Sequence record: NC_070966.1
DNA length: 64,000 bases
Reading direction: 5' to 3' (one strand)
Each line of letters begins with the position of its first letter. Within the stretch, counting starts at the first letter, position 1. This document shows positions 7,044 through 18,106 of the stretch, piece after piece. A program made the position numbers and the translations under genes. The notes below the pieces were generated by a model. It was not told the DNA's origin and ran no database searches. It saw only the letters and a program-made list of their open reading frames with translations.

Positions 7044-7055
7044 TGCCGGATTTAT

Positions 7056-7131: not shown

Positions 7132-7176
7132 CTTTTTAGATGTTGATTAAGTTCCGTCTAACAATGAGAGAATACA

Positions 7177-7508: not shown

Positions 7509-7509
7509 T

Positions 7510-7586: not shown

Positions 7587-7605
7587 GTTATATTAAACTA
7601 TTCGT

Positions 7606-7681: not shown

Positions 7682-7684
7682 AGT

Positions 7685-7761
7685 ACCACCTTAACTCAGA
7701 TGGATAGAGTACTCGACCGATAATCGAGTTGTCATTGGTTCAAGTCCAATAGGTGGTACCA
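7685..7761 (+). tRNA. tRNA-Ile(GAT)
   Basis: ACCACCT/AGGTGGT-ACCA; loop CCGATAA. Confidence 0.93.
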
Positions 7762-7779
7762 ACTTTTATTGAGTAGATA

Positions 7780-8367
7780 ATGAAGTGCAGTTATTGTGAA
7801 ACTGAGTTTAGACATCTGAGTCGACATGTTAGATATTGTCCTCAGAATCCTGACAGAATTGTCAAGTTAAATCAGTTCTCTAAGGCTGAGTCATTAGGCT
7901 TACCTAAGCCGCCATTGTCTGAGAAATCTCGGAGAATGACTACTGAAAGAAATGCATCTCGAGTATGGACTCCAGAGATCAGATCTAAATTATCTAAGAG
8001 TATGATTAAGTACTTTAAAGATAATCCTGAAGCTCATCCGTACTTAAAGTATCATTCAAGTGGTGAATCATATGCTGAAGGATTCTTTCGAGAATTCTTT
8101 TTAAGTCATGATTTATCATTCAAACAAGAGTTGCAGGTTGGTCTCTATACACTTGACTTCGCATTTGAGGACAAGATGATTGATGTAGAGATCAACGGTA
8201 ACTTTCACTATAATAATCCTGGAATTGTTGAGAAAGATCAACGACGAAGACTCTTCTTGGAAGAGCGTGGATGGACTATTATAGAAGTTCGATGGTCTGA
8301 GTATAAGAAGATGAATGAGTCAGAGCGATCTGATTATCTGAATTCCTTATTATCTCAACTATCCTGA
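7780..8367 (+). CDS. free-standing putative homing endonuclease (zinc finger plus DUF559/Vsr-like domain)
   Basis: CSYC...H..YC; 'QVGLYTLDFAFEDKMIDVEINGNFH...DQRRRLFLEERGWTIIEV'. Confidence 0.8.
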   Translation: MKCSYCETEFRHLSRHVRYCPQNPDRIVKLNQFSKAESLGLPKPPLSEKSRRMTTERNASRVWTPEIRSKLSKSMIKYFKDNPEAHPYLKYHSSGESYAEGFFREFFLSHDLSFKQELQVGLYTLDFAFEDKMIDVEINGNFHYNNPGIVEKDQRRRLFLEERGWTIIEVRWSEYKKMNESERSDYLNSLLSQLS

Positions 8368-8443
8368 CGCGGGATGGCGCAGTCGGTAGCGCGCAAGAGT
8401 CATAATCTTGAGGTCGAGGATTCGAGTTCCTCTCCCGCAACCA
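8368..8443 (+). tRNA. tRNA-fMet-like (CAT)
   Basis: C1:A72 mismatch (CGCGGGA/TCCCGCA-ACCA); loop GTCATAA; anticodon stem CAAGA/TCTTG. Confidence 0.85.
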
Positions 8444-8449
8444 GTTTCA

Positions 8450-8640
8450 GTTAACGAGGCCACCGTATCTAGATTAATCTACCTCACAGGTATCTAGATC
8501 GTAGTGAGTTTGAGCGGAGCAGTCTTAACTGCATCGTTGTGGTCCCATCGATAATGCGGTCCTGAGATGGGATAGGACTCTATCTGAGTGCACAAGGATA
8601 GATGCACCTAAGCGGTCTCTGCGATGAGATCCACCGCTCC
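8450..8640 (+). ncRNA. candidate multibranch structured RNA
   Basis: GAGCGG(8512)/CCGCTC(8634) closes four hairpins (GCAGT/ACTGC, TCCCATC/GATGGGA, CTATCT/GGATAG, GGTCTC/GAGATC); upstream ATCTAGAT pair; no ORF. Confidence 0.5.
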
Positions 8641-8704
8641 ATAATCTGTAATCTTGATGTGAACAGTGTCGTAGATATCTCATCAGTAATATCGAGTTAA
8701 TGAG

Positions 8705-9205
8705 ATGATGTATATCCGATACGCTTTATACTTACCAGTTAATCTACTACTTGTACTGTCAGCATATGTGTTCTCACCTATTCTAGCAGCACTTTCTCTT
8801 GTCACCGGTCCTACGCTTCCTGGAGTACTTCAATGGTTCTCTACTACGGATGACGATTTAGATGGTGGAATTCATCAAAATGTCTCAGGTTATAAGTCTG
8901 GACTCAAAGGATTCTCACTATGGTGGCAACGTACATGTTGGATCTGCAGAAATCCTGCTCATGGGTGGCAGTCTAACTTACTAGGCATGTCTGTTGATGG
9001 ATTCGAATTTATCGAGAAGATCGATATTTCTACTCCTAAATGGTATCTGATGAAGAACAACAAGCATACGTTCTTCATGTGGAAGAAGGATCAACGTCTC
9101 TTCTCCAAGTACTATCTGAAACTATGGTTCGGATGGCTGAATACTGCATATGATGGTAAGAATCATCATTATGAATTTCAGATTGGATTGAAGAGTAAGA
9201 ATTAA
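8705..9205 (+). CDS. hypothetical membrane protein
   Basis: Hydrophobic N-terminal helix; Trp-rich 'WWQRTCWICRNPAHG'. Confidence 0.75.
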   Translation: MMYIRYALYLPVNLLLVLSAYVFSPILAALSLVTGPTLPGVLQWFSTTDDDLDGGIHQNVSGYKSGLKGFSLWWQRTCWICRNPAHGWQSNLLGMSVDGFEFIEKIDISTPKWYLMKNNKHTFFMWKKDQRLFSKYYLKLWFGWLNTAYDGKNHHYEFQIGLKSKN

Positions 9206-9206
9206 C

Positions 9207-9294
9207 GACCCTGTGACGGAGTGGTTGAACGTGCCGGTCTGCAAAATCGGTGGCATGAATTTGTCCGCGAGTTCGAATCTCGCTAGGGTCTCCA
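9207..9294 (+). tRNA. tRNA-Cys(GCA) with a long variable arm
   Basis: GACCCTG/TAGGGTC-TCCA (U73); arm CCGGT-CTGCAAA-ATCGG; 16-nt variable region containing GGCA/TGTC. Confidence 0.85.
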
Positions 9295-9304
9295 AGGTTA
9301 AACT

Positions 9305-9415
9305 ATGAAGTATGCAATCATTCTAGCACTTCTTCTAGCAGGATGTCAATCTGCTGAAGAGCGTTACTATTCAGATTTGTCTACAGGTGTAGGCATGGTT
9401 CTAAAGGATAAATAA
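9305..9415 (+). CDS. small lipoprotein (36 aa; not in the ORF track)
   Basis: MKYAIILALLLAGCQS: signal peptide with LAGC lipobox; SD 'aaggt' upstream. Confidence 0.65.
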   Translation: MKYAIILALLLAGCQSAEERYYSDLSTGVGMVLKDK

Positions 9416-9532
9416 ATGTCAACTATTATTGTTGCAGTTGTAGCATTCATTGCAGGTGGATACGCTAGTAAGAATTTTGGATTCGATCTAGTTGAGTATG
9501 CCAAGGCTGCTTATAACAAGTTTAAGGCATAA
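9416..9532 (+). CDS. small membrane protein (38 aa; not in the ORF track)
   Basis: [19 protein letters not shown]...; ATG immediately follows the previous TAA. Confidence 0.6.
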
Positions 9533-9541
9533 TGCCTTTGT

Positions 9542-9618
9542 CGGAGCGTAGCGCAGCCAGGTAGCGCAATAGTTTTGGGTACTATGGGTCGTCTGTTCGA
9601 ATCAGACCGTTCCGACCA
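9542..9618 (+). tRNA. tRNA-Pro(TGG)
   Basis: CGGAGCG/CGTTCCG-ACCA; loop TTTGGGT. Confidence 0.95.
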
Positions 9619-9620
9619 AT

Positions 9621-9697
9621 ATTCCCTTGGACAAGCGGTTTAAGTCATCTCACTTTCACTGAGAAGATCACGGGTTCAAATCCCGTAGGGAATACCA
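9621..9697 (+). tRNA. tRNA-Glu(TTC)
   Basis: ATTCCCT/AGGGAAT-ACCA; loop CTTTCAC. Confidence 0.93.
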
Positions 9698-9699
9698 AT

Positions 9700-9730
9700 T
9701 TCAGCGAAGTTAGGCTCTTGTAGCCTTCCT
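9700..9730 (+). promoter_or_regulatory. conserved intergenic motif, copy 3
   Basis: TTCAGCGAAG ttaggctcttg TAGCCTTCCT. Confidence 0.6.
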
Positions 9731-9795
9731 TCTTGTATCGGTTAGTAGTGTCAATCCGAGCTATTAATGTGAGTATTAAGTATCGGATTCTATGA

Positions 9796-9892
9796 TCGAG
9801 AGTGGTGGAACGGTAGACACATCCAGATAAAAGAGCAGTTTCTGGACGCTACTTAAATATGCGTGCTAGTTCAAGTCTAGCCTCTCGAACCA
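9796..9892 (+). tRNA. aberrant Leu-type tRNA with a 14-nt anticodon loop (no assignable anticodon)
   Basis: TCGAGAG/CTCTCGA-ACCA, Leu-like D arm and long variable arm, normal T arm; anticodon arm TCCAG-ATAAAAGAGCAGTT-CTGGA. Confidence 0.7.
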
Positions 9893-9926
9893 ATATTATA
9901 TGCTCATTCTTAGATAGGGATTACCA

Positions 9927-10688
9927 ATGGGTAAATTACATGAAATCCTCGCGGTTGAAGGTGACCTCGTAGGTGTAGCCAAGAAAGTTACTGAAGAAGC
10001 TATCGCTACGTTCAGCAAGCGTGCAGATCACTTCAGTGAGACTACTACTGAACAGAAATACTTTGCAGACGATGAGCAGCATCTCAATACGTCTGAATCT
10101 AAGGCAATGGTGACCACTGTACCTGACAAGCTCAAGTACATCGTTGATCCTATTGCTAAGTTCTTCGATGCGTACTATTCGAAGGAAGCTACCAATCAGA
10201 TCGCTAAGGCTGACGTAGAAGTCAAGGGTACAACGATCTTTGCAGATGTTCCAGCAACGGTTCTCCTAGGTATGGAGACTAAGCTTCGTGAACTCCGTAA
10301 GGTCTATGAATCGATTCCGACTCTCGCTCCTGGTGTATTCTGGGAGAAGGATGTTAATCGTCCGGCAGGTGTATACCGTGCTCGTGAACCTGAAGTCCGA
10401 TTCGTTACGAAGAAGACTGTACGTCCGATCACTCTTTCACCTGCTACTGACAAGCATCCTGCTCAGATTGAGAAGGTCAATGAAGATCTTCCTGTCGCTA
10501 AGAAGACGATTACTACCTGGAGTAGTATGATGTCGTCAGCTGACAAGAGCAAGGTCCTCGAACGTATCGATACTCTGATCCGTGCAGTTAAGACTGCTCG
10601 TCAGCGTGCAAACGGTACTGAGGCAGTATCTGCTTCATCCTTCGGTGATAAGATTTTCGACTTTATCCATCAAGGTATCGTCGACTAA
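9927..10688 (+). CDS. conserved-looking hypothetical protein (253 aa) followed by structured RNAs
   Basis: Strong ORF with SD; 'LSPATDKHPAQIEKV' and 'AVKTARQRAN' resemble a bacterial family I recall as DUF7873-like (unverified). Confidence 0.75.
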   Translation: MGKLHEILAVEGDLVGVAKKVTEEAIATFSKRADHFSETTTEQKYFADDEQHLNTSESKAMVTTVPDKLKYIVDPIAKFFDAYYSKEATNQIAKADVEVKGTTIFADVPATVLLGMETKLRELRKVYESIPTLAPGVFWEKDVNRPAGVYRAREPEVRFVTKKTVRPITLSPATDKHPAQIEKVNEDLPVAKKTITTWSSMMSSADKSKVLERIDTLIRAVKTARQRANGTEAVSASSFGDKIFDFIHQGIVD

Positions 10689-10736
10689 GAATTGAATGTT
10701 GAGGCTACCAGCATAGCCTCCATTCTCCGACTCCCA

Positions 10737-10826
10737 TAGGGACAAACTCAGCCTTAAACTTATTGTGAGTATCAAGAATTTATCTTCTGCTCAAGATAAA
10801 CAAACTAGCTTTGTATCCCTAAAACT
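10737..10826 (+). ncRNA. structured segment with four AAACT repeats
   Basis: TAGGGAC..AA/TTTGTATCCCTA closure; AAACT at 10744, 10756, 10802, 10822; inner TTTATCTT/AAGATAAA hairpin. Confidence 0.4.
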
Positions 10827-10847
10827 TAGACAAGATTTACCAGATCT

Positions 10848-10990
10848 AGTCGTAGCATATCTCTATTTTCCCGGAAGGTCGTGAGTTCGAGTCTCATCAC
10901 CGCACCCAATTACCTACAATTGGACTGATGCGGTGTAGCTCAGTGGTAGAGCGTTCGTTTTATCTTGAAGATATCCTATCGATGATGACT
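10848..10990 (+). ncRNA. divergent Y-RNA-like RNA with a circularly permuted tRNA module
   Basis: T arm GTGAG-TTCGAGT-CTCAT, then acceptor CACCGCA...TGCGGTG closed internally, then D arm TAGCTCAGTGGTAGAGC; outer ATATCT/AGATAT and AGTCGT/ATGACT stems. Confidence 0.7.
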
Positions 10991-11142
10991 GTATGAATCT
11001 ATCGTAACGATTAAATATGCTCCGCGATAGGAGTGTATGTTACATTAACAAGAACAGGGTGGTTCCATGCGGAATGTGGTTCCACCCACCTCTTCTTATA
11101 TAAGATCATTCGGATTTTATATAATAAGAATTTGAGGTTTAC

Positions 11143-11430
11143 ATGAGTAAGGCATCAAGATTACTTAGCAAGATCAATGAATTGGACGGTGGATCTAAGG
11201 ACCCACTGGTTCAATCAGGTTGTGCTAAGATTGTAGCTTATTGTCAGAAGAAGAGTCTTAGTGCTACTGAGATTGAGCAGATTAAGGATCAGATTCTTGA
11301 CGACGAGCCTCTTCACAATCATACTGCAGATACACTAGCTGCAATCGGTCTTGATATGAATATCAAGTCTGAGCTTGTAGCGATTGGTCTCAGTAGTGAT
11401 GAAGCTGATGCGATTATGAATGTAACCTAA
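11143..11430 (+). CDS. hypothetical protein, MSKAS...NE tag family
   Basis: MSKASRLLSKINE; SD 'gaggt'. Confidence 0.75.
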   Translation: MSKASRLLSKINELDGGSKDPLVQSGCAKIVAYCQKKSLSATEIEQIKDQILDDEPLHNHTADTLAAIGLDMNIKSELVAIGLSSDEADAIMNVT

Positions 11431-11437
11431 CAGACAT

Positions 11438-11511
11438 GCTCCTATAGTTAAGTGGTATAACTCCTGTTTTGTAATCAGGGTTCCTCAGTTCGATTCTGGG
11501 TGGGAGCACCA
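11438..11511 (+). tRNA. tRNA-Thr(TGT)
   Basis: GCTCCTA/TGGGAGC-ACCA; loop TTTGTAA. Confidence 0.92.
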
Positions 11512-11563
11512 TGATTTCTTGAATCCTAACTCATAGTGAGTTAGAGATAACAAGGAAGATAAA

Positions 11564-11860
11564 ATGAGTGATGAAGTTAATAAGACTGTCGTAACTAGAG
11601 AAGAACATCGAGGTACTGCTTGTAAGTACTATGATACTCGTGGTAAAGCATACGATGCTATTATCACTGAAGTATGGGGACCTCAATGCGTCAACCTTGT
11701 CTATGTCAATGATGTAGAAGGTCAGAAAGATTCTTATGGTCAGAAATTGATCAGATCATGTTCTGTGATGCATGGTAGTGTTCAGCAAGCTCATGGCAAC
11801 TATTGGATGTTACCAGGAGAGACTCGAGTTTCTAAATATGTTCATGATTCAGCTATTTAA
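11564..11860 (+). CDS. hypothetical protein
   Basis: SD 'aaggaag'; compact ORF. Confidence 0.75.
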   Translation: MSDEVNKTVVTREEHRGTACKYYDTRGKAYDAIITEVWGPQCVNLVYVNDVEGQKDSYGQKLIRSCSVMHGSVQQAHGNYWMLPGETRVSKYVHDSAI

Positions 11861-11925
11861 TTAACTTCTGTGATCTTCCGACCTTGACGCGACGAAGTAG
11901 CAGATAACTTATAAACTTTCTTGTT

Positions 11926-12513
11926 ATGTTTTATACTATCTATCGAATAACCAACAATGTTAACAGTAAGATATATGTTGGTATGCACCAGACTACTAAT
12001 TTAGATGACGGTTATATGGGATCGAGCAGATTATTGTTCAATGCTATGAAGAAGCACGGTCCTGATAACTTCTCTAAAGAGATTCTACATGTCTTTGATA
12101 ATAAAGAAGACATGTTTAGTATGGAAGCACAGATAGTAGACGAACAATTTGTTAAAAGATCTGATACATACAACCTAAAGACAGGTGGAGTAGGATCTTT
12201 TAGCTACATTAATTCATCTCCTGAATTTCGACAAAGGTCAATTTCAAGAATTCGTGAATTATGTAAGTCTGATACACCGTATCGTAGAATTCAATCTAAT
12301 AAATTGAAAGATGTTCGATACGATTTCACTGGTCATAAGCATACTGAAGAATCGATCTCTAAGATGAAAATATCTAAGGTCGGTCACGGAGAGGGTTCTT
12401 CGAATTCTCAGTATGGGACGATCTGGATTAATAATGGAGTGAAGAACTCTAAACTTAAATCTAATCTACCTATTCCAGATGGTTGGAGTAGAGGTAGAAA
12501 GATGGGCTTGTAG
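11926..12513 (+). CDS. GIY-YIG homing endonuclease (Seg-like, NUMOD3-type C-terminus)
   Basis: 'TIYRITNNVNSKIYVGMH...YMGS', 'TYNLKTGG', 'GHKHTEESISKM', 'NSQYGTIWINNG'. Confidence 0.9.
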   Translation: MFYTIYRITNNVNSKIYVGMHQTTNLDDGYMGSSRLLFNAMKKHGPDNFSKEILHVFDNKEDMFSMEAQIVDEQFVKRSDTYNLKTGGVGSFSYINSSPEFRQRSISRIRELCKSDTPYRRIQSNKLKDVRYDFTGHKHTEESISKMKISKVGHGEGSSNSQYGTIWINNGVKNSKLKSNLPIPDGWSRGRKMGL

Positions 12514-12578
12514 TGATAACGGGAGCACGATGCCTTTGCACGGCATAGGACAGGGTTCGATTCCCTGCTAGTCCACCA
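12504..12578 (+). tRNA. tRNA-Ala(TGC)
   Basis: GGGCTTG/CTAGTCC-ACCA with G3:U70; loop TTTGCAC. Confidence 0.93.
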
Positions 12579-12630
12579 CATTAGGTCGTATCAACCTGAG
12601 GTTAACCGTAGTTACTCAAACTGATACAAT

Positions 12631-12717
12631 GGGATTTCAGACGTGTTGGAGTGCGATCGGCAGACTGTAAATCTGTCCTCTTAGAGCTACTAGGTTCGAA
12701 TCCTAGAAGTCCCACCA
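12631..12717 (+). tRNA. tRNA-Tyr(GTA)
   Basis: GGGATTT/AAGTCCC-ACCA; loop CTGTAAA; long variable arm. Confidence 0.9.
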
Positions 12718-12722
12718 TATTT

Positions 12723-12764
12723 ATAGCCTCATATCGGAGCAATCTGGTATGAGGCTATTTCTTT
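12723..12764 (+). terminator. probable intrinsic terminator
   Basis: ATAGCCTCATATCGGA-GCAA-TCTGGTATGAGGCTAT followed by TTCTTT. Confidence 0.7.
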
Positions 12765-12838
12765 CATGTTAAAGAGAGGGGCGATGTATTATGATCGTTA
12801 CGACATCTTCTAGGTAAAACAACCTAGGAGTATAAAGC

Positions 12839-13141
12839 ATGAAGTCGCATTATATTAAGTCTGAGAAGTTTCGTTGGAATCGAGACGATAAGATCGAATA
12901 TATTTACAAGCTCAGAGCTGGTAATTATTACCGTGATCTTAAGACCTTTCAGGAGATCTCTGCGAATGAGTTCGTTAAGTTTGATCCTGACTGTATCGAG
13001 TATAAGATTCCTCCTCGTTATGGACGACTTAATCATTACTTGAACAAGTGGAATCTTGAGAGATTTCCTTCTAAGTCTTATAAGAAGTCTTGGAAGTTTG
13101 CTCACAGATGCCGTAAGCAATGGATGATCAATCTTGAATAA
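12839..13141 (+). CDS. hypothetical basic protein
   Basis: SD 'aggag'; overlaps the next ORF. Confidence 0.7.
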   Translation: MKSHYIKSEKFRWNRDDKIEYIYKLRAGNYYRDLKTFQEISANEFVKFDPDCIEYKIPPRYGRLNHYLNKWNLERFPSKSYKKSWKFAHRCRKQWMINLE

Positions 13142-13319
13142 GATGACATTCGATGATTGGTGTGATCAGGTCGATACTGTAGCGAGTAAAGCTATGGGAG
13201 GACCTGAATCATACACTAAGGCCACTGGCAGAGAATGCTGGATGGATATGTATAACGATGGATTCACTCCTGAAGATGCATGGACTGAAGAGTCTTTATG
13301 TATTCAGGAGTCCCTTTAA
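13134..13319 (+). CDS. hypothetical protein
   Basis: Small acidic ORF overlapping the previous stop. Confidence 0.65.
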   Translation: MNKMTFDDWCDQVDTVASKAMGGPESYTKATGRECWMDMYNDGFTPEDAWTEESLCIQESL

Positions 13320-13337
13320 TTCTAGATGGATAAGTTA

Positions 13338-13481
13338 ATGAATTTTCTCGGTAAAATCTTTTCTGCAGATTCTAAGAAGCTGGATGACGCGAAGGCTCTT
13401 CTTGCAGAAGTAACTGCATCGAAGAATCGTATCATCAATAATGATCTTAAGGGTCGTATTGAGACTTTCTTGAGTGCATGA
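13338..13481 (+). CDS. small hypothetical protein (47 aa; not in the ORF track)
   Basis: MNFLGKIFSADSKKLDDAK...; 'ggataag' upstream. Confidence 0.55.
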   Translation: MNFLGKIFSADSKKLDDAKALLAEVTASKNRIINNDLKGRIETFLSA

Positions 13482-13520
13482 GATAGAAGGCTAAAAGACG
13501 CGAATTATTCGCCTAGATTG

Positions 13521-13548
13521 AGCGAACTTAGCGTCTGATAGCCTTCCT
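13521..13548 (+). promoter_or_regulatory. conserved intergenic motif, copy 4 (3' arm of a long hairpin at 13486-13546)
   Basis: AGCGAAC ttagcgtctga TAGCCTTCCT; inverted partner GAAGGCTA..AGACGC..TTCGC upstream. Confidence 0.55.
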
Positions 13549-13565
13549 TCTTTGTCAGACGGTGA

Positions 13566-13641
13566 TGGCTAGTAGCTCAGTTGGTAGAGCATTGCACTGT
13601 TAATGCGACGGTCGTAGGTTCGAGCCCTACCTAGTCAGCCA
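13566..13641 (+). tRNA. tRNA-Asn(GTT)
   Basis: TGGCTAG/CTAGTCA-GCCA; loop CTGTTAA. Confidence 0.95.
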
Positions 13642-13664
13642 GTCTGCTTATAAAGGATTCTTAG

Positions 13665-13871
13665 ATGGAACGTGTATATAGTTTAGTTTATGTTGCTATC
13701 ATTACAGCAGGTGTAGTCGCAGGTATCACAGCACTCACTCTACCTTTGTACTATGGTACGATTGATAGTAATCGTAAACAATCTGAGTTGTCAAGTAAGT
13801 GTGTTGACTCAGGAGGGTCCTGGATCGTAGGTCCTAATGGATACTACCAGTGTATTGCTGGTCGTAAGTAA
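13665..13871 (+). CDS. small membrane-anchored protein
   Basis: N-terminal TM helix; C-terminal C..SGG.W......C motif. Confidence 0.7.
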   Translation: MERVYSLVYVAIITAGVVAGITALTLPLYYGTIDSNRKQSELSSKCVDSGGSWIVGPNGYYQCIAGRK

Positions 13872-13880
13872 TGTGAATAA

Positions 13881-13972
13881 GGATAGTTGGCTGAGTCTGG
13901 TCTAAGGCGCTCGACTTGAAATCGAGAGGACGTGAGAGCGTTCCGTGGGTTCGAATCCTACACTATCCGCCA
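13881..13972 (+). tRNA. tRNA-Ser(TGA)
   Basis: GGATAGT/ACTATCC-GCCA; loop CTTGAAA; long variable arm. Confidence 0.93.
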
Positions 13973-13990
13973 TATTTATTATTGAGTATA

Positions 13991-14377
13991 ATGGATCAAA
14001 TAGTAAAGAAAAAGAGGACTAGACGTCCTGTTTCTTTAGAGACTAGAATGAAATTATCTGCTGCTCTTAAGGGTAAACCTCAGAGTAAAGTTTCTAATGA
14101 AGAGATTTTTGCAGATAATACTACTCATCCTAGACATCGTATTAAAGAAAGAATAATTCGAGATAATCTTATTCCATACGAGTGTGCAATCTGTGAAAAT
14201 GATGGTACATGGAATGGTGAACCTTTATCTTTACATCTAGACCATGAAAATGGTAAGAATAATGATAATCGTCTTGAGAATCTTAGATTCTTATGTCCTA
14301 ACTGTCATAGTCAAACAGATACTTATGCAGGTAAGAATAAGAAACGTAAGAGAATCAAGAGAGAAGAGCGTGTTTAG
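13991..14377 (+). CDS. HNH homing endonuclease (start moved to 13991; the track start at 13916 lies inside tRNA-Ser)
   Basis: CAICEN...LSLHLDHENGKNNDNRLENLRFLCPNCHSQT. Confidence 0.88.
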   Translation: MDQIVKKKRTRRPVSLETRMKLSAALKGKPQSKVSNEEIFADNTTHPRHRIKERIIRDNLIPYECAICENDGTWNGEPLSLHLDHENGKNNDNRLENLRFLCPNCHSQTDTYAGKNKKRKRIKREERV

Positions 14378-14441
14378 TTCAATGGTAGAATGCGAGTCTC
14401 CAAAACTTGATATGAGAGTTCGATTCTCTCAGCACGTGCCA
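14368..14441 (+). tRNA. tRNA-Trp(CCA)
   Basis: GCGTGTT/AGCACGT-GCCA; loop CTCCAAA. Confidence 0.9.
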
Positions 14442-14477
14442 ATTCTAGATATTAAATAAACACTTGGATAAGAAGAA

Positions 14478-15122
14478 ATGTCAAAAGCAAGAGATTTACT
14501 TAATACCTTGAATGAAGCTGATGATTGGAATATTCACAAGAAAGAGTTGAAGAAGGCTGGATTTGATCTCCATCCTAATCATCACGCTAATGTGAATATC
14601 AATCGTAACAACTATCCTCAGAATCGTGATATCTATACGGGTAAAATGAGTAATGGTCATACGATGGTTATTACTCAATTAACTCCGATTGATATGGATC
14701 GATACGCATCTGTTAAGGATGCTTCTGGTAAATTTATCAAGCACTACTACGTAGCTCCTGTTAAACCTACACTGAGTAAAAGTCCTGTATTAAAGTCTAC
14801 AGCGATCGGTAATGATCCTAAGACAGTACTTGAAGAAATCAAAGCAGCTATGAGAATGGTTCCAGAAGGACGTCAGGCTACCTTTAGATCTGTTGAACAG
14901 AATGGTAAGTACTATGAGTTCGATGTCAGATACTGGGGAAGCTGGGAAGTTCCTGATGGTGAAGACGATGATGGAGACTACGACTTTGAAGTCTTGACAT
15001 CTAAATCGTCTAAGTCACTTCAGAACATTGTTGAGCCTATCATTAAGAAATATCCAAGTCTAGATATCTACTATCAAACTGGAGAGAAGAATTATATTAC
15101 TGTTCATGCTACTGTAAAGTAG
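14478..15122 (+). CDS. hypothetical protein, MSKA...NE tag family
   Basis: MSKARDLLNTLNE N-terminus. Confidence 0.8.
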   Translation: MSKARDLLNTLNEADDWNIHKKELKKAGFDLHPNHHANVNINRNNYPQNRDIYTGKMSNGHTMVITQLTPIDMDRYASVKDASGKFIKHYYVAPVKPTLSKSPVLKSTAIGNDPKTVLEEIKAAMRMVPEGRQATFRSVEQNGKYYEFDVRYWGSWEVPDGEDDDGDYDFEVLTSKSSKSLQNIVEPIIKKYPSLDIYYQTGEKNYITVHATVK

Positions 15123-15132
15123 TTGACAGTAT

Positions 15133-15217
15133 GTCGGTATGGCGGAATTGGTAGACGCCCTGGTTTTAGGTACCAGTGTCGAAAGACGTGTAGGTTCGAG
15201 TCCTATTACCGACACCA
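15133..15217 (+). tRNA. tRNA-Leu(TAG)
   Basis: GTCGGTA/TACCGAC-ACCA; loop TTTAGGT; long variable arm. Confidence 0.95.
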
Positions 15218-15223
15218 AATTAT

Positions 15224-15358
15224 GACTTGATGTTGCGAAAGAAATGGTTACTTCGTATTCCAAACGAGAAATGTAGGTATCGAATCCTGCTATCCTAATA
15301 GGATATCGTCTAAGATAGGACGCTAAAATTTCCATTTCTGACACTATCTCATCAAGTC
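15224..15358 (+). ncRNA. Y-RNA-like unit 1 (permuted tRNA-Gly-like module)
   Basis: GACTTGATG-TTGCGA...TATCT-CATCAAGTC; inner AGAAATGG/CCATTTCT; loop ATTCCAA, then T arm, TATCC-TAATA-GGATA, then D arm. Confidence 0.75.
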
Positions 15359-15366
15359 TCATATTC

Positions 15367-15449
15367 AGATCTTGACGTTGCGACTAGTATCGGATACTTC
15401 GCTTTGGTTGCTAAAAACTCCGATGCAATATACTATCTCGTCAAGATCT
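15367..15449 (+). ncRNA. Y-RNA-like unit 2 (short; no T/D arms)
   Basis: AGATCTTGACG-TTGCGA...TATCT-CGTCAAGATCT; inner GTATCGGA/TCCGATGC; apical GC-TTTGGTT-GC. Confidence 0.7.
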
Positions 15450-15459
15450 TTCAGTTTAT

Positions 15460-15604
15460 CCTAACGTTGCGAATTAAACAGTTACTTCGATATCAAGCAG
15501 AAGGTCAATGGTTCGAATCCATTCATGCGACACGCGTTGCATGTAGCTCAGTTGGTTAGAGCGTCCGCCACCACAAGATCTGTTTAAGTCATTATCTCGT
15601 TAGG
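15460..15604 (+). ncRNA. Y-RNA-like unit 3 (permuted tRNA module)
   Basis: CCTAACG-TTGCGA...TATCT-CGTTAGG; TTAAACAG/CTGTTTAA; AATGG-TTCGAAT-CCATT, CATGCGAC/GTTGCATG, TAGCTCAGTTGGTTAGAGC. Confidence 0.8.
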
Positions 15605-15613
15605 TCCTTATAA

Positions 15614-15758
15614 CCTAGTGTTGCGATCGGTACAACTTCATCGCATTGTAAGCCCTGTGTCATTGGTTCAAATCCAATTCCTCCGTCCATCTATCGGAGG
15701 ATAGCTCAGTCTGGTAGAGCAAGGAAAGTATGTTGTATCAATATACCATCTCACTAGG
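15614..15758 (+). ncRNA. Y-RNA-like unit 4 (permuted tRNA-Thr-like module)
   Basis: CCTAGTG-TTGCGA...CATCT-CACTAGG; loop ATTGTAA; ATTGG-TTCAAAT-CCAAT, TCCTCCG/CGGAGGA, TAGCTCAGTCTGGTAGAGC. Confidence 0.8.
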
Positions 15759-15896
15759 ATCCTTATCTCATCCACCAACCTCGGTGTAAGAGTGGAAAGA
15801 GTTACGTGATCGTATGAGAATACGATCACAGTCATTTAGGTCATGTACCATGTGTACAAGGATCATTCGAAGGTGCTCGTCATCTTCAGCAAATAA

Positions 15897-16040
15897 TGTA
15901 GAGTTGCGAATATATCAAGTTCATCGCTTACCATATACCAAGCGGGTAGCTCAGTGGTTAGAGCACTAGGATGTAACAGTCGTAGAGGTCGTCGGTTCGA
16001 ATCCGACTCTAACTTCTTGATATAGACTTATCTCTCTACA
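15897..16040 (+). ncRNA. Y-RNA-like unit 5 (tRNA arms in normal D-anticodon-T order)
   Basis: TGTAGAG-TTGCGA...TATCT-CTCTACA; TATATCAAG/CTTGATATA; D arm TAGCTCAGTGGTTAGAGC precedes T arm GTCGG-TTCGAAT-CCGAC. Confidence 0.75.
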
Positions 16041-16049
16041 ACTTTTATA

Positions 16050-16184
16050 TGTACTGTTGCGACTAATACGGTTACTTCGTTGCAAATGAAACATAGGTTC
16101 GAATCCTATCCAGAGGATTGTCGTAAGATGACATCTGGCTGAGCATTGGTGAGCTCATCTCCGTATTAACTACATCTCAGTACA
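16050..16184 (+). ncRNA. Y-RNA-like unit 6 (permuted tRNA-Cys-like module)
   Basis: TGTACTG-TTGCGA...CATCT-CAGTACA; TAATACGG/CCGTATTA; loop TTGCAAA; ATAGG-TTCGAAT-CCTAT, CCAGA/TCTGG, TGAGC/GCTCA. Confidence 0.78.
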
Positions 16185-16195
16185 ATTACAATTCG

Positions 16196-16350
16196 TACCG
16201 TTGCGAATGATATGAATACATCGCTGTAGAACCGACGTCGTAAGACATGCTAGTTCAAGTCTAGCTCTCCGTCCCAATACTATGACGGAGATGGTGAAAT
16301 TGGTAGACACATCGGTAGATAAATCTTCATATCGGCTTACAATCTCGGTA
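16196..16350 (+). ncRNA. Y-RNA-like unit 7 (permuted type-II tRNA-Tyr-like module)
   Basis: TACCG-TTGCGA...AATCT-CGGTA; TGATATGAA/TTCATATCG; CTGTAGA, variable arm, GCTAG-TTCAAGT-CTAGC, TCTCCGTC/GACGGAGA, TGGTGAAATTGGTAGACAC. Confidence 0.8.
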
Positions 16351-16360
16351 TATCTTAGAC

Positions 16361-16385
16361 GCTATGTTGCGATAGTCCTCATAGC
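16361..16385 (+). promoter_or_regulatory. minimal Y-stem hairpin in the Ro60 5' leader
   Basis: GCTATG-TTGCGA-TAGTCCT-CATAGC, ending 20 nt before the Ro60 ATG. Confidence 0.55.
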
Positions 16386-16405
16386 ATTATCATAGGGAAA
16401 ATGTC

Positions 16406-17974
16406 ATGGCTTCGATCAATAATAAGTCAGTTGCTAATCTTGCACGTACGGTTGCTCCTAAGGCAGTTGTAGCACCTCGTACATTCACTGGTTTATCTCA
16501 TAACATTCGTAACAATAATGGTGCGATGGCGTATGATATCACTCCTATCGAGCAATTGAGACGTACTGTTCTCTCTTGCATGCTCTGGGAGGATTCTGCA
16601 TATGAGTCTGGTGAACAGATTGCTAATCGTATTGAAAGATTGATCGGAGAGTGTGATCCCTCTGATGTAGCACATCTTGCTCGTGAAGCAAGACATATCA
16701 TGAAGCTACGTCATGTTCCTCTCTTTATGTGCATCACGATGCTGAAGTATCCCGAACATAAGAAATATGTTCGTAAGACACTCGCATCAGTTATTGAGCG
16801 TCCTGATGAGCTTGGTCAAGCTCTCGCTCTCTACTGGAAGGATGCTCTTTCTCCTGCTCGTACTACTGAAGATACTGAAATCGGACCTCGAGTTACTTAC
16901 GTTTCTCAGAGAAAGTCTGATCTGAATCTTCCTCTCCAACTACGTAGAGGTCTTGAAGATGCTCTACAGAAGTTTGACTCTTATCAGTTGAAGAAGTACC
17001 TTATGAAGGACAAGCCTGTCTCTATGGCTGACATTCTTCGTATCGTCCACCCTAAGGGTAAGACTGATGAGATCAAAGCTACCTATGGCGAAATCGTCAA
17101 GGGTACTGCTACTGCACCTGATACATGGGAGTCTCGTCTCTCATCTTCTGGTAGATCTGAGAAAGCTACAATCTTCACAGATATGCTCGAACGTAACAAA
17201 TTAGGTGCAATGGCTCTACTGAAGAATCTGCGTGGTATGACTGAGGCTGGTGTTGATACCAATCTTATTAATACTGCGATTCAGAAGATGAATACTGAAC
17301 GTGTTCTTCCTTTCAGATTCCTCACAGCTGCTCGTCATGCTCCTCAGTTCAAGTCTAGTCTCGGTGAGGCTATGCTAAAATCTCTGAAGGACATTCAGAA
17401 TCTGCCTGGTCATACAGTACTACTGATTGACATCTCAGGTAGTATGGGTGGACGTATTTCAGGTAAGTCTGATCTGAGACGTATTGATGCTGCAGCTGCT
17501 ATTGCTATCATGTTGAAGGAAATTTGTCAGTCTTCTGATATGTTTGTCTTCAATTATGGTACGTATCAAGTACGTAACGATAACGTCTTCTGCGTGAATC
17601 AACCTACTGCTAACAATCACGGATACTCCAGGATTGTTGAGAGTACGAGGATCTACAATTACGAAGAAGATGCTGTAGTGAAGAGAGGATTTGATCTATC
17701 AGATCTTATCGTCAATTCAGTAGTTGGTGGAACTGATCTCCAGCAAGCTGTCAGTTATATCAATAATACTGTAGAGTATGATCGTATGATTATCTTTACA
17801 GATGACGAATCATCTACTGTTCCGCCAGCTCCTAGAGATCTTTCCTATTCGATCAACGTATCGACTGGAAACTATGGAGTGACGTACGGTGACTATGTCC
17901 ACATCAACGGATTCTCTGAAGGTGTGATTGGCTATGTCACTGAGTACGATAAGTACGTGAAGAGTCAGAATTAA
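16406..17974 (+). CDS. rsr: Ro60/Rsr ribonucleoprotein (TROVE domain plus vWA)
   Basis: N-terminal 'NNNGAMAY...EQLRRTVLSCMLWEDSAYESG', 'LKLRHVP', 'PDTWESRLS', 'ALLKNLRGM', 'RVLPFRFLTA'; vWA 'LIDISGSM...GGTD...IIFTDDES'. Confidence 0.92.
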   Translation: MASINNKSVANLARTVAPKAVVAPRTFTGLSHNIRNNNGAMAYDITPIEQLRRTVLSCMLWEDSAYESGEQIANRIERLIGECDPSDVAHLAREARHIMKLRHVPLFMCITMLKYPEHKKYVRKTLASVIERPDELGQALALYWKDALSPARTTEDTEIGPRVTYVSQRKSDLNLPLQLRRGLEDALQKFDSYQLKKYLMKDKPVSMADILRIVHPKGKTDEIKATYGEIVKGTATAPDTWESRLSSSGRSEKATIFTDMLERNKLGAMALLKNLRGMTEAGVDTNLINTAIQKMNTERVLPFRFLTAARHAPQFKSSLGEAMLKSLKDIQNLPGHTVLLIDISGSMGGRISGKSDLRRIDAAAAIAIMLKEICQSSDMFVFNYGTYQVRNDNVFCVNQPTANNHGYSRIVESTRIYNYEEDAVVKRGFDLSDLIVNSVVGGTDLQQAVSYINNTVEYDRMIIFTDDESSTVPPAPRDLSYSINVSTGNYGVTYGDYVHINGFSEGVIGYVTEYDKYVKSQN

Positions 17975-17981
17975 GTAGTGA

Positions 17982-18009
17982 GAATTGGGAGTGAAATACC
18001 TCCCAATTC
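17982..18009 (+). terminator. stem-loop after Ro60 (terminator or processing site)
   Basis: GAATTGGGAG-TGAAATAC-CTCCCAATTC; weak U tract. Confidence 0.45.
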
Positions 18010-18022
18010 CATTTATCTAAAT

Positions 18023-18106
18023 GCCCACTTGTCGGAATTGGTAGACGACCGAGACTTAAAATCTTGTGCCTATGGCGTACCGGTTCGAGTCCGGTAGTGG
18101 GTACCA
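18023..18106 (+). tRNA. tRNA-Leu(TAA)
   Basis: GCCCACT/AGTGGGT-ACCA; loop CTTAAAA. Confidence 0.95.

What the first reader, a model, noticed from the sequence alone, without database searches (positions are those of the whole stretch)
15224..16350. The Y-like units keep anticodon loops, and some rejoin into complete cloverleaves
Seen: 7-nt anticodon-like loops sit just 3' of the shared linker: ATTCCAA (Gly TCC, unit 1), TTTGGTT (Pro TGG, unit 2), ATTGTAA (Thr TGT, unit 4), TTGCAAA (Cys GCA, unit 6) and CTGTAGA (Tyr GTA, unit 7). Unit 3 is ambiguous. Joining the D-arm end to the 5' piece gives a perfect stem in unit 4 (A-AGG|GC-ATTGTAA-GCCCT) and unit 7 (TCGGT|CTGTAGA-ACCGA, with a type-II variable arm as in real Tyr tRNAs). 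All five anticodons also occur as intact tRNAs in this window. Established: canonical YrlA models have the Ro-binding stem replacing the anticodon arm. Inference: each unit arose independently by circular permutation of a different tRNA, and the displayed anticodon loops may be substrates or decoys for specific anticodon nucleases, or ligase-processed intermediates.
Basis: partly seen in the sequence, partly recalled or inferred. Interest (0 to 1): 0.8.

Follow-up and report, generated by a model that had tools for sequence, protein, structure and literature searches.

The report
Phage Y RNAs keeping anticodon-like arms
Upstream of its Ro protein gene, a Rhizobium phage carries seven Ro-binding "Y RNA" units built like circularly permuted tRNAs. 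Two or three of them keep a genuine anticodon-arm look-alike that turns out to be conserved in many phage and bacterial Ro loci, while the other claimed "anticodons" are coincidences.

Summary
The window is Rhizobium phage RHph_TM30. The unannotated gap 15218-16405 holds seven Y-RNA units (stem-GTTGCGA ... ATCTC-stem) just upstream of a TROVE/Ro gene.

**What is in the sequence.** All five quoted 7-mers are there, and intact tRNAs with the same anticodons exist in the window.
- **U1 and U6:** only these have a self-contained anticodon-like hairpin.
- **U4:** a split version of the same hairpin.
- **U2:** its 7-mer lies in a conserved UGGUU loop motif.
- **U7:** its 7-mer lies in a conserved GGAAC motif, and its body resembles tRNA-Leu, not Tyr.

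**The rejoin test has no power.** Random 7-mers in rejoined U4 or U7 are called tRNA by ARAGORN 300 times out of 300.

**Comparative support is strong.**
- In 161 units from viral Ro loci, hairpins with exactly 7-nt loops occur in 40 units, against about 11 in shuffles.
- In 32 close matches, U33 is present in 31/32, a purine at 37 in 32/32 and A38 in 32/32.
- The stem covaries.
- The middle triplet takes 17 values and does not match the tRNA body.
- The same class occurs in Bradyrhizobium and Acidobacteria.

**What was already known.** Chen et al. 2014 drew this hairpin as a "V" arm.

**Verdict.** This is a new variant or reading of the known YrlA family. Independent origins from cognate tRNAs are not supported. 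The decoy function is untested.

The parts
15224..15358 (+). U1: Y-RNA unit with all four tRNA arms in permuted order (anticodon-like arm, T arm, closed acceptor hairpin, D arm) plus the Ro-binding stem as a fifth helix
   Evidence: Motifs GTTGCGA 15232 and ATCTC 15346. Fold, coordinates. Model R1 scores 26.8 bits at 15248-15290.
15252..15268 (+). U1 anticodon-arm look-alike: TTCGT-ATTCCAA-ACGAG (5 bp, 7-nt loop, U33, A37, A38)
   Evidence: The same TTCGT/ACGAG stem occurs in Rhizobium and Rhizomicrobium units L241 and L230 and in viral L174.
15368..15448 (+). U2: short Y-RNA unit without T or D arms. It has a small hairpin GC-TTTGGTT-GC (15401-15411) between the linker TACTTCG and TAAAAAC.
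   Evidence: The TGGTT(G) loop motif is shared with Gurke 2155, CcrColossus 1843, Bambus 2167, L142 and L138.
15460..15604 (+). U3: YrlA-like unit with good T arm, 7+1 bp closed acceptor and D arm. Its anticodon-like hairpin has decayed (CTTC/GAAG with an 11-nt loop, 15485-15503).
   Evidence: Rfam YrlA 36.2 bits; R1 27 bits. Y65 keeps the T stem through compensatory changes.
15614..15758 (+). U4: YrlA-like unit. The loop ATTGTAA (15645-15651) is flanked by GC/GC, and the 3' strand CCT pairs with AGG (15722-15724) after the D arm, giving a split anticodon-like stem.
   Evidence: Rfam YrlA 37.3 bits pairs CCT with AGG. Coordinates. R1 15.9 bits. The linker variant TTCATCGC matches L161 TTTCATCGC-CTGTTAA-GCGAG.
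15898..16039 (+). U5: Y-RNA unit whose tRNA-like part is in native order (D arm, anticodon-like arm of 3+3 bp with a 6-nt loop, T arm), as in the Yrn1 orientation. It has no canonical 7-nt loop.
   Evidence: Rfam tRNA 33.9 bits at 15945-16009, model positions 6-65. Y65 shows the compensatory change CTA/TAG to CCA/TGG and a 5-nt loop.
16051..16183 (+). U6: unit with the anticodon-like hairpin TTCG-TTGCAAA-TGAA (16076-16090), a T arm, an acceptor stem interrupted by an inserted hairpin, and a D arm
   Evidence: R1 19.1 bits. The minimum-energy fold prefers a 6-bp stem with a 3-nt loop.
16194..16351 (+). U7: type-II, tRNA-Leu-like unit. The stem ACCGA (16231-16235) / TCGGT (16312-16316) closes the tRNA-like domain. 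CTGTAGA (16224-16230) is single-stranded junction sequence carrying the class motif (G/A)GAAC.
   Evidence: Orthologs in CcrColossus 2132 and Bambus 2312. Y65 reads CTGTGGA.
16366..16372 (+). Eighth, isolated GTTGCGA motif inside a small hairpin, 34 nt before the Ro start codon. It has no ATCTC partner.
16406..17974 (+). Ro60/Rsr ortholog (TROVE + vWA), 522 aa, the presumed protein partner of all units
   Evidence: Annotated as a TROVE domain protein in MN988521. Homologs in 73 phage records.
15133..15217 (+). Intact tRNA-Leu(TAG), the closest relative of the U7 body
   Evidence: D arm 15/18, variable arm 11/14, overall 57/81 identical.

Best explanation
**What it is.** The 1.2-kb gap upstream of the phage Ro gene is a same-strand array of seven Ro-binding Y RNAs of the YrlA kind. 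Each unit has an outer stem carrying the Ro site (GTTGCGA / ATCTC, the phage form of the published GNCGAA motif). Next comes a second stem, then the conserved YUAY-UUCG linker, then an effector module.

**Unit classes.** The modules fall into at least four classes that recur in distant phage and bacterial Ro loci.
- One class keeps a hairpin colinear with a tRNA anticodon arm: positions 27-43, followed by a 5-nt AGGUC-type variable loop and the T arm. In this class the Ro stem is inserted between positions 26 and 27 rather than replacing the anticodon arm. TM30 members are U1 and U6, U4 in split form, and U3 in decayed form.
- Selection keeps the stem, the 7-nt loop size, U33, purine 37 and A38. 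The middle triplet is free to change and does not encode an amino-acid identity.
- U2, U5 and U7 belong to other classes, and their 'anticodons' are accidental readings.

**How it probably works (inferred, not shown).** The RNAs are cut out of a long transcript and bound by phage Ro. The full tRNA mimicry, including the anticodon end, lets the particle engage or competitively occupy a host factor that inspects the shape of tRNA anticodon loops. Candidates are an anticodon-loop nuclease or a loop-modifying enzyme. Ro may additionally be tethered to an exoribonuclease such as PNPase, as in characterised Ro/Y RNA systems.
For: **Locus.**
- The window is RHph_TM30. The Ro gene follows the array on the same strand.
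- There are eight GTTGCGA motifs here against two elsewhere in the 64 kb, and seven are paired with ATCTC.
- Rfam YrlA gives sub-threshold hits on U3 and U4.

**Homologous arrays.** They share the same linker and occur in Xanthomonas, Brevundimonas and Caulobacter phages, in 71 of the Ro loci screened (almost all IMG/VR viral contigs) and in Bradyrhizobium, Acidobacteria and Hyphomonadaceae genomes.

**Hairpin test.**
- With the linker TTC as the 5' strand and exactly a 7-nt loop, at least 4 contiguous pairs occur in 40/161 units.
- The shuffled mean is 10.8, with a maximum of 20 in 200 shuffles.
- Other loop sizes give 9-17 units. The 9-nt register gives 29, mostly the same hairpins read one pair out.

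**Covariance-model hits.**
- 97.5% of cells are paired, against 35-54% when partners are slid.
- 4 of 5 anticodon-stem pairs change on both sides (GC17/CG11/UA3; AU19/CG11/UA2).

**Loop make-up (n=32).**
- U33 in 31, R37 in 32, A38 in 32.
- 17 different triplets.
- Variable loop of 4-5 nt in 31 of 32.

**Colinearity with tRNA.**
- The same model hits the anticodon-variable-T region of real tRNAs in the window at up to 29 bits.
- Rejoined class members from other genomes are called tRNA by ARAGORN.

**Bradyrhizobium orthologs.** Diversity is 0 at position 33, 0.1 at 37, 0.6-0.7 at 35-36 and about 0 in the T arm. The rsr third codon position is 0.40.

**Literature.**
- YrlA is a permuted tRNA mimic modified by TruB and DusA. 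M. smegmatis YrlA is cut by RNase P and receives CCA. A 'V' stem-loop after a conserved YUAY was noted (PMC4201824).
- Salmonella YrlA 'lacks the anticodon loop' (10.1101/312249).
- A phage Ro/Yrl/PNPase complex has been described (PMC12135203).
- A competitive-inhibitor idea has been published (PMC7790460).
Against: **Missing direct evidence.**
- There is no expression, end-mapping, Ro-binding or structure-probing data for this phage.
- No promoter signal above shuffles was found, and the only terminator-like site lies after rsr.

**Weak points in the TM30 units themselves.**
- They score weakly with the class model (16-27 bits, within the range of ordinary tRNAs).
- U1 has an atypical T loop (8 nt) and a D loop without GG. 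U6 has a broken acceptor stem. ARAGORN rejects both when rejoined.
- TM30 and Y65 are identical in the U1, U4 and U6 hairpins, so they give no covariation within this phage lineage.

**Limits of the statistics.**
- The covariation count was made on an alignment fitted to the model, which leans towards the structure.
- The sequences are related, so counts are not independent events.

**Alternative geometry.** In three dimensions the hairpin might sit where a long variable arm sits, as Chen et al. drew it, with stem 2 stacking as the anticodon stem.

**Function.**
- The fast-changing triplet fits simple lack of constraint as well as it fits diversifying selection.
- No RNA ligase, RtcB or polynucleotide kinase is annotated in the roughly 180 of 207 kb inspected, though most genes there are 'hypothetical'.
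Confidence: 0.55

Rival explanations
1. Five units each arose by separate circular permutation of the tRNA with that anticodon (Gly, Pro, Thr, Cys, Tyr). Each displays that specific anticodon loop as a decoy or substrate for a matching anticodon nuclease, or as a ligation intermediate.
For: - All five triplets are also anticodons of intact tRNAs in the window.
- U7 does have a type-II body.
- U4 and U7 rejoin into ARAGORN-positive cloverleaves.
- Phage tRNAs are known to counter tRNA-targeting defences (my own knowledge).
- A competitive-inhibitor role has been proposed for YrlA (PMC7790460).
Against: - The cognate tRNA is never the best match of a rejoined unit.
- The U7 body is Leu-like. Its 7-mer overlaps a GGAAC class motif on segments of 4-7 nt in orthologs. 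Y65 reads GTG there, and no tRNA-His was found in the window or annotated in the 180 kb inspected.
- The U2 7-mer has T37 and overlaps a conserved TGGTT motif.
- Random 7-mers rejoin equally well.
- Class members in other genomes share one body with different triplets, including Ser and Tyr triplets on type-I bodies and A34 triplets not used by bacteria.
- Three real loops matching 19 of about 45 usable anticodons is expected by chance at about 0.08 (inference).
Confidence: 0.1
2. The hairpin after the YUAY linker is only a long variable arm, the 'V' stem-loop of Chen et al. 2014, or a generic stabilising hairpin. Its likeness to an anticodon arm would then be coincidental, and the helix leading to the Ro site would be the true anticodon-stem equivalent.
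For: - Chen et al. modelled it this way (PMC4201824).
- In the Salmonella YrlA crystal structure the helix towards the Ro site occupies the anticodon-stem position (10.1101/312249).
- Topologically, a hairpin between that helix and the T arm is where a type-II variable arm sits.
- The triplet is not conserved.
Against: - The preferred loop size is exactly 7 nt.
- The U33 / R37 / A38 signature holds at 97-100%.
- The hairpin is followed by a separate 4-5 nt AGGTC-type variable loop before the T stem. The 'V' region would therefore be about 26 nt, longer than natural variable arms (my knowledge).
- The model of hairpin + loop + T arm cross-hits real tRNA anticodon-variable-T regions.
- Rejoining at 26|27 gives ARAGORN-positive tRNAs with normal numbering.
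Confidence: 0.2
3. The units are permuted tRNA genes that mature into working tRNAs. This would need cleavage in the acceptor loop by RNase P and a 3' nuclease, CCA addition, and removal or tolerance of the Ro stem. They would then supplement the phage tRNA set.
For: - U3, U4 and U7 have 7-bp acceptor stems followed by the usual 2 nt before the D stem.
- M. smegmatis YrlA is cleaved by RNase P and gains CCA in vivo (PMC4201824).
- Permuted tRNA genes exist in algae (my knowledge).
Against: - Every unit keeps a Ro-binding motif and lies next to Ro.
- The units with the best acceptor, D and T arms (U3, U4, U7) lack a closed anticodon arm. Those with a closed arm (U1, U6) have defective elbows or acceptor stems.
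- Across homologs the triplet does not match the body identity, and it changes between close relatives.
- The phage already has intact tRNAs for these anticodons.
- No RNA ligase is annotated.
Confidence: 0.05
4. Nothing special: the 7-mers are chance strings in linker regions of ordinary YrlA RNAs.
For:
- The rejoin test has no power.
- U2 and U7 are explained by other motifs.
Against: The comparative enrichment, covariation and loop signature apply to the class that includes U1 and U6.
Confidence: 0.1

Closest known systems
YrlA bacterial Y RNAs (Rfam RF02553; Chen et al. 2014, PMC4201824; structure in Wang et al. 2018, 10.1101/312249)
   Same: - Encoded next to, and on the same strand as, a Ro60 ortholog.
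- Ro motif near the 5' end.
- Conserved YUAY.
- T arm, closed acceptor hairpin and D arm in circularly permuted order.
- Several copies per locus, and presence in phages, already reported.
- A 'V' stem-loop upstream of the T arm already noted.
   Different: - All TM30 units fall below the Rfam gathering score (36-37 bits against 69).
- The Ro motif reads TGCGA(A) instead of GNCGAA.
- There are seven units of several architectures in one array.
- In U1 and U6, and in the wider class, the hairpin has the size and conserved positions of an anticodon arm and is followed by its own variable loop. The Salmonella reference RNA 'lacks the anticodon loop'.
Deinococcus radiodurans Yrn1
   Same: - Ro-bound Y RNA with a T-arm-like element.
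- Arms in native order (D-like, anticodon-like, T).
- A potential 5-bp anticodon arm with a 6-nt loop. U5 has this order and a 6-nt loop.
   Different: U5 carries a full canonical D arm and T arm (Rfam tRNA 33.9 bits). No sequence similarity to Yrn1 was tested.
Circularly permuted tRNA genes of the red alga Cyanidioschyzon merolae and some green algae
   Same: The 3' half of the tRNA is encoded upstream of the 5' half, with the acceptor ends joined by a short loop.
   Different: - The algal genes mature into decoding tRNAs through a circular intermediate, and their anticodons match their bodies.
- Here each unit keeps a Ro-binding stem at the junction, and triplets are not matched to bodies.
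- No processing evidence exists for these units.
Phage Ro60 with Yrl RNAs of Thermus phage phiLo (PMC12135203)
   Same: A phage-encoded Ro with Y-like RNAs directly upstream, carrying a CGAA-type motif. That system forms a complex with host PNPase.
   Different: In what I read of that paper, the phiLo RNAs are described as stem-bulge-stem Y RNAs, and a term search found no mention of an anticodon. No sequence comparison was made here.
tRNA-like decoys and phage tRNAs that counter tRNA-targeting defence nucleases
   Same: Phage-encoded tRNA-shaped RNAs sit in a tRNA gene cluster, and an exposed anticodon-type loop could be recognised by anticodon nucleases.
   Different: No nuclease, cleavage or protection has been shown for any Y RNA of this class. 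Salmonella YrlA was reported not to be cut by the SOS-induced anticodon nuclease (PMC7790460).

Membership tests
YrlA / bacterial Y RNA (RF02553) | Encoded within a few kb of, and on the same strand as, a Ro60 (TROVE) gene | tested here: met
   Units lie at 15224-16351 (+) and Ro at 16406-17974 (+).
YrlA / bacterial Y RNA (RF02553) | Ro-binding motif GNCGAAN0-1G near the 5' end within a terminal stem | tested here: inconclusive
   All seven units have GTTGCGA flanked by a complementary outer stem, with ATCTC on the 3' side. CGAA is present in U1, U3, U5 and U7, and CGA in the rest. The first G of the published motif is T. Distant phage units carry the exact GGCGAAG / GGTGAAG forms.
YrlA / bacterial Y RNA (RF02553) | T arm, closed acceptor-like hairpin and D arm in that (permuted) order | tested here: met
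   Met for U1, U3, U4, U6 and U7. Not met for U2 (no arms) or U5 (native order).
YrlA / bacterial Y RNA (RF02553) | Score at or above the Rfam gathering threshold (69 bits) | tested here: not met
   No hit at gathering threshold. The best scores are 37.3 bits (U4) and 36.2 bits (U3).
YrlA / bacterial Y RNA (RF02553) | Conserved YUAY preceding the region upstream of the T arm | tested here: met
   TTAC in U1, U3 and U6, and ATAC in U2 and U7. U4 and U5 carry the TTCATCG variant.
YrlA / bacterial Y RNA (RF02553) | Physically bound by Ro, with tRNA-type modifications (pseudouridine 55, dihydrouridine) | not testable with these tools
   Needs immunoprecipitation and modification mapping.
Functional tRNA | Recognised as a tRNA in native gene order, with paired free 5' and 3' acceptor ends | tested here: not met
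   ARAGORN finds no tRNA between 15218 and 16405. Rfam tRNA hits only the U5 core, positions 6-65, without an acceptor stem.
Functional tRNA | Anticodon consistent with the identity features of the body | tested here: not met
   The U7 'Tyr' sits on a Leu-like body. In homologs, GCT and GTA triplets sit on bodies with 4-5 nt variable loops, and A34 triplets occur. The triplet varies among Bradyrhizobium orthologs.
Permuted tRNA genes (algal type) | 3' half upstream of the 5' half, with processing through a circular intermediate to a mature tRNA | tested here: inconclusive
   The gene order is met. Maturation is not testable here. The identity mismatch argues against it.
Anticodon stem-loop (as a structural element) | 5-bp stem, 7-nt loop, U33, purine 37, followed by a variable loop and T arm | tested here: met
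   U1 meets it fully. U6 has 4 bp. U4 meets it only in split form. U2, U3, U5 and U7 do not. Class-wide figures: 7-nt preference and shuffle control, covariation, U33 31/32 and R37 32/32.

The most novel reading that the evidence does not exclude
The anticodon-like hairpin of this Y-RNA class is a programmable specificity element. Its framework (stem, U33, R37, A38) is fixed, while the triplet turns over at least as fast as synonymous sites between close relatives.

Each phage or bacterium would then tune its Ro particles in one of two ways:
- to bait, block or report on particular anticodon-loop nucleases or modification enzymes;
- to capture particular tRNAs by loop-loop pairing for Ro/exonuclease handling.

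Arrays of several units, as in TM30, would be a repertoire of such baits deployed during infection.
Probability: 0.15. Interest if true: 0.8.

Novelty: new variant of a known kind. Interest (0 to 1): 0.5.

Why it matters
What the tRNA-like domain of bacterial and phage Y RNAs is for has been open since 2014.

A large, widespread subclass mimics the whole tRNA, including an anticodon arm. The loop architecture is under selection but the triplet is free. This narrows the candidate partners to factors that read anticodon-loop shape, and it gives a simple handle for experiments: mutate U33 or R37, or swap triplets.

It also has a practical side. Several phage genome records annotate pieces of these units as tRNA genes, and the Rfam YrlA model misses them at its threshold. 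Seven-unit arrays like this one therefore go unannotated.

Tried and rejected
1. **Brute-force rejoining with ARAGORN, exact rejoining and random 7-mers.** The test cannot discriminate, so it is rejected as evidence.
2. **Motif scan of IMG/VR, GTTGCGA-N6-16-TACTTCG.** I take these for chance matches: 14 specified bases, and no locus had more than one hit. This reading is an inference and the hits were not checked.
3. **Single-protein search of IMG/VR for close Ro relatives.** Nothing found. An alignment-based search was needed.
4. **Similarity of rejoined units to cognate phage tRNAs.** No support. It revealed the U7-Leu relation instead.
5. **Linker TCG(C) pairing with the Ro motif (G)CGA as a switch.** The complementarity is present in all seven units but is not above shuffles (161/1000). 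Dropped.
6. **Promoter and terminator scan.** Nothing above shuffles inside the array.
7. **Search for RNA-repair genes in the annotation of about 180 kb of the phage.** None are named, but most genes are hypothetical, so this says little.
8. **Two reviews on bacterial Y RNAs (PMC10870794, PMC6047535) and the supplement of Chen 2014.** None could be read. Prior description of the hairpin as anticodon-like cannot be fully excluded.
Full report
**Identity of the locus**

The window is 100% identical to Rhizobium phage RHph_TM30 (MN988521; Kleczkowskaviridae, Cuauhnahuacvirus). It contains 20 tRNA genes, all on the + strand between 4636 and 18106, interspersed with homing endonuclease genes. A 522-aa TROVE/vWA Ro60 ortholog lies at 16406-17974.

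The 1.2 kb between tRNA-Leu(TAG) (15133-15217) and the Ro gene is unannotated in GenBank. It contains eight copies of GTTGCGA, against two in the rest of the 64 kb. Seven are matched downstream by ATCTC, and the flanking bases form a complementary outer stem. This defines seven units:

| Unit | Coordinates |
|---|---|
| U1 | 15224-15358 |
| U2 | 15368-15448 |
| U3 | 15460-15604 |
| U4 | 15614-15758 |
| U5 | 15898-16039 |
| U6 | 16051-16183 |
| U7 | 16194-16351 |

An orphan motif sits at 16366. At the gathering threshold Rfam finds only the tRNAs and the tRNA-like core of U5. With a relaxed threshold, the YrlA family (RF02553) hits U4 at 37.3 bits and U3 at 36.2 bits, against a threshold of 69.

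**Anatomy of the units**

All units share this order: outer stem, GTTGCGA, a second stem, then a linker (TTACTTCG, ATACTTCG, TTCATCG or TACATCG). After the linker they differ.

- **U1:** a closed hairpin TTCGT-ATTCCAA-ACGAG, a 4-nt variable loop, a T arm with an 8-nt loop, a closed acceptor hairpin and a D arm. That is all four tRNA arms in permuted order, with the Ro stem as a fifth helix.
- **U6:** the same plan, with hairpin TTCG-TTGCAAA-TGAA and an interrupted acceptor stem.
- **U3 and U4:** the best T, acceptor (7 bp) and D arms. The U3 hairpin has decayed. The U4 loop ATTGTAA is closed by only two local pairs, and the next three pairs (CCT) are made with AGG after the D arm. This is the closing stem that the Rfam YrlA model also draws.
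- **U7:** a 3-bp D stem and a long variable arm. Its domain is closed by ACCGA/TCGGT, and CTGTAGA is simply the 7 nt before that stem.
- **U2:** no tRNA arms.
- **U5:** its arms are in native tRNA order.

**Checking the observation**

The five 7-mers and the five matching intact tRNAs are real.

This test has no power. With 300 random 7-mers each, U4 and U7 are called tRNA every time. A systematic scan of join points yields many different 'anticodons'. The cloverleaf therefore reflects the T, D and acceptor arms and the closing stem. That is the known description of YrlA as a circularly permuted tRNA (10.1101/312249; PMC4201824).

**Origin**

- None of the rejoined units is most similar to its 'cognate' phage tRNA.
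- U7 is closest to the neighbouring tRNA-Leu(TAG): 57/81 identical, D arm 15/18, variable arm 11/14. Against tRNA-Tyr it is 48/81, with a poor alignment.
- In the 97%-identical phage RHph_Y65, units U1, U2, U4 and U6 are essentially unchanged.
- U3, U5 and U7 differ heavily between the two phages, with compensatory changes that keep the U3 T stem, the U7 D stem (GTG/CAC to GGG/CCC) and the U5 stem (CTA/TAG to CCA/TGG).
- The U7 7-mer becomes CTGTGGA in Y65.

**Distant homologs**

Ro homologs of 31-40% identity occur in 63 further phage records. The loci of Xanthomonas phage 10KY502B, Brevundimonas phages Gurke and Bambus and Caulobacter phage CcrColossus carry arrays with the same plan. Each unit has a 5' strand GGTGGCGTAG or GGTGGTGAAG (the published GNCGAAN0-1G Ro motif), a second stem, the linker TTACTTCG and a 3' strand GTTCCCC.

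Some units there have perfect anticodon-type arms in which the linker supplies the 5' strand:

| Hairpin | Phage |
|---|---|
| TTCGA-CTTGTAA-TCGAG | Xanthomonas phage 10KY502B |
| TTCGA-CTGCTAA-TCGGG | Gurke |
| TTCGA-CTGTTAA-TCGAG | CcrColossus |
| TTCCT-ATCTCAA-AGGGG | Xanthomonas phage 10KY502B |

GenBank or ARAGORN call tRNA genes at these places.

Orthologs of U7, with a Leu-like D arm and a long variable arm, have TGGAA (CcrColossus) or TCTGGAA (Bambus) between the linker and ACCGG. The segment length is therefore not fixed at 7, and the conserved part is GGAAC, which Y65 also has. Orthologs of U2 share a TGGTT(G) loop motif. Both U2 and U7 'anticodons' are thus explained by other conserved motifs.

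**Statistics on a wider sample**

An alignment-based search found 502 viral contigs encoding Ro relatives, of which 80 loci were fetched. A regular expression for Ro motif plus linker found 186 units in 71 loci, 161 of them non-identical.

| Test | Result |
|---|---|
| Hairpin with linker TTC as 5' strand, exactly 7-nt loop, at least 4 contiguous pairs | 40 of 161 units |
| Same test after shuffling the downstream 22 nt | mean 10.8, maximum 20 in 200 shuffles |
| Loops of 4, 5, 6 or 8 nt | 9-17 units |
| 9-nt register | 29 units, mostly the same hairpins read one pair out |

A covariance model of linker + hairpin + variable loop + T arm found 33 strong matches.

- 97.5% of cells are paired, against 35-54% when partners are slid.
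- Four of the five hairpin pairs show changes on both sides. The alignment is fitted to the model, so this leans towards the structure.
- In 32 loops, U33 occurs in 31, a purine at 37 in 32 and A38 in 32. Position 32 is C, A or U.
- The middle triplet takes 17 values: GTT 6, GCT 6, TCT 3 and others.
- The following variable loop is 4-5 nt in 31 of 32. This includes the units with 'Ser' GCT and 'Tyr' GTA triplets, whose real bacterial tRNAs have long variable arms.
- The model also hits the anticodon-variable-T region of real tRNAs in the window at up to 29 bits.
- Rejoined class members are called tRNA by ARAGORN.

The hairpin is therefore colinear with, and has the conserved features of, an anticodon arm. 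Its triplet is not tied to a tRNA identity, and the class has a common body rather than many independent origins.

**Not phage-specific**

The same model gives 123 matches in 80 bacterial Ro loci: Bradyrhizobium, Rhizobium, Hyphomonadaceae, Acidobacteria and others. These loci again have 3-4 units each.

Nucleotide diversity among 21 Bradyrhizobium orthologs:

| Site | Diversity |
|---|---|
| Position 33 | 0 |
| Position 37 | 0.1 |
| T arm | about 0 |
| Position 34 | 0.3 |
| Position 35 | 0.6 |
| Position 36 | 0.7 |
| Closing pair 31/39 | 0.6 |
| rsr third codon position | 0.40 |

The triplet changes at least as fast as the fastest sites. This fits lack of constraint and does not prove diversifying selection.

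**Relation to the literature**

- Chen et al. 2014 reported YrlA RNAs next to Ro in 254 bacteria and 22 phages. [quoted passage not shown]
- Wang et al. 2018 state that Salmonella YrlA lacks the anticodon loop.
- Hughes et al. 2020 suggested the YrlA tRNA-like domain might competitively inhibit an anticodon nuclease.
- A Thermus phage Ro binds two upstream Y-like RNAs and host PNPase.
- In the papers I could read I found no statement that the 'V' hairpin has the size and invariant positions of an anticodon loop.

**Conclusion**

The array is a set of phage Y RNAs of the YrlA kind, a known kind. It points to a real, widespread and apparently under-described feature.

It is wrong for U2 and U7. 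The 'rejoining' argument is empty, and the inference of independent origins from cognate tRNAs is not supported.

The mechanism I favour is inferred, not shown. It is full-length tRNA mimicry that lets the Ro particle engage or block a factor reading anticodon-loop shape, with Ro possibly tethered to an exonuclease. No RNA-repair enzyme is annotated in the roughly 180 kb of the genome inspected, but most genes are unnamed. No promoter signal stands out within the array.

Noticed in passing
window 16356-16405: An eighth GTTGCGA (16366-16372) without an ATCTC partner sits in a small hairpin (GCTATG ... CATAGC) 34 nt before the Ro start codon. It may be a Ro-binding site in the rsr leader, which would suggest autoregulation.
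   Followed up: no
window 15764-15896: The 133-nt spacer between U4 and U5 has a second ATCTC (15765) and two perfect hairpins (GTGATCGTAT-GAGA-ATACGATCAC, and a TGTACA palindrome). Its function is unknown. It may be a remnant unit or a processing or termination signal.
   Followed up: no
window 15898-16039 (U5): One unit has its tRNA-like arms in native order (D, anticodon-like, T) and passes the Rfam tRNA threshold (33.9 bits, model positions 6-65) without an acceptor stem. Its anticodon-like arm has 3+3 bp with a G.G mismatch and a 6-nt loop. In Y65 the stem is kept by a compensatory change and the loop is 5 nt.
   Followed up: partly
window 15460-15604, 15898-16039, 16194-16351 against L002 (RHph_Y65): Divergence between two 97%-identical phages is mosaic. 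U3, U5 and U7 are heavily rewritten, with compensatory changes, while U1, U2, U4 and U6 are nearly identical and rsr has few differences (22 in 1569 nt). This suggests recombination or fast evolution of particular units.
   Followed up: partly
L121 2316-2383, L122 2281-2355, L124 1643-1710: 'tRNA' features in the GenBank records overlap Y-RNA units: tRNA-Thr in Xanthomonas phage 10KY502B, tRNA-Ser in Brevundimonas phage Gurke and tRNA-Gln in CcrColossus. The Ro-side strand, anticodon-like hairpin and T arm appear to have been read as a tRNA, so these are probably mis-annotations.
   Followed up: partly
window 9207-9294; also L122 5660-5746 and L123 6126-6212: tRNA-Cys(GCA) genes of 87-88 nt with a long variable arm and a Ser/Leu-like D arm occur in TM30 and in two Brevundimonas phages near their Ro loci. 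A type-II-shaped Cys tRNA is unusual.
   Followed up: no
L122 5857-6202 (Brevundimonas phage Gurke): Rfam permuted tmRNA (RF04321) hit at 57.7 bits, above its threshold of 47, about 2 kb downstream of the phage Ro gene.
   Followed up: no
L215-L288 (Bradyrhizobium and other bacterial Ro loci), about 300-700 nt upstream of rsr: Bacterial genomes also carry arrays of 3-4 different Y-RNA units upstream of rsr. Short units whose only module is the anticodon-like hairpin also occur, for example viral L128 2260 TTCA-CTGCTAA-TGAA.
   Followed up: partly
window 4636-18106: All 20 tRNA genes found lie in one + strand cluster interleaved with GIY-YIG/HNH homing endonuclease genes. No tRNA-His was found, although the Y65 U7 junction reads GTG.
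   Followed up: no
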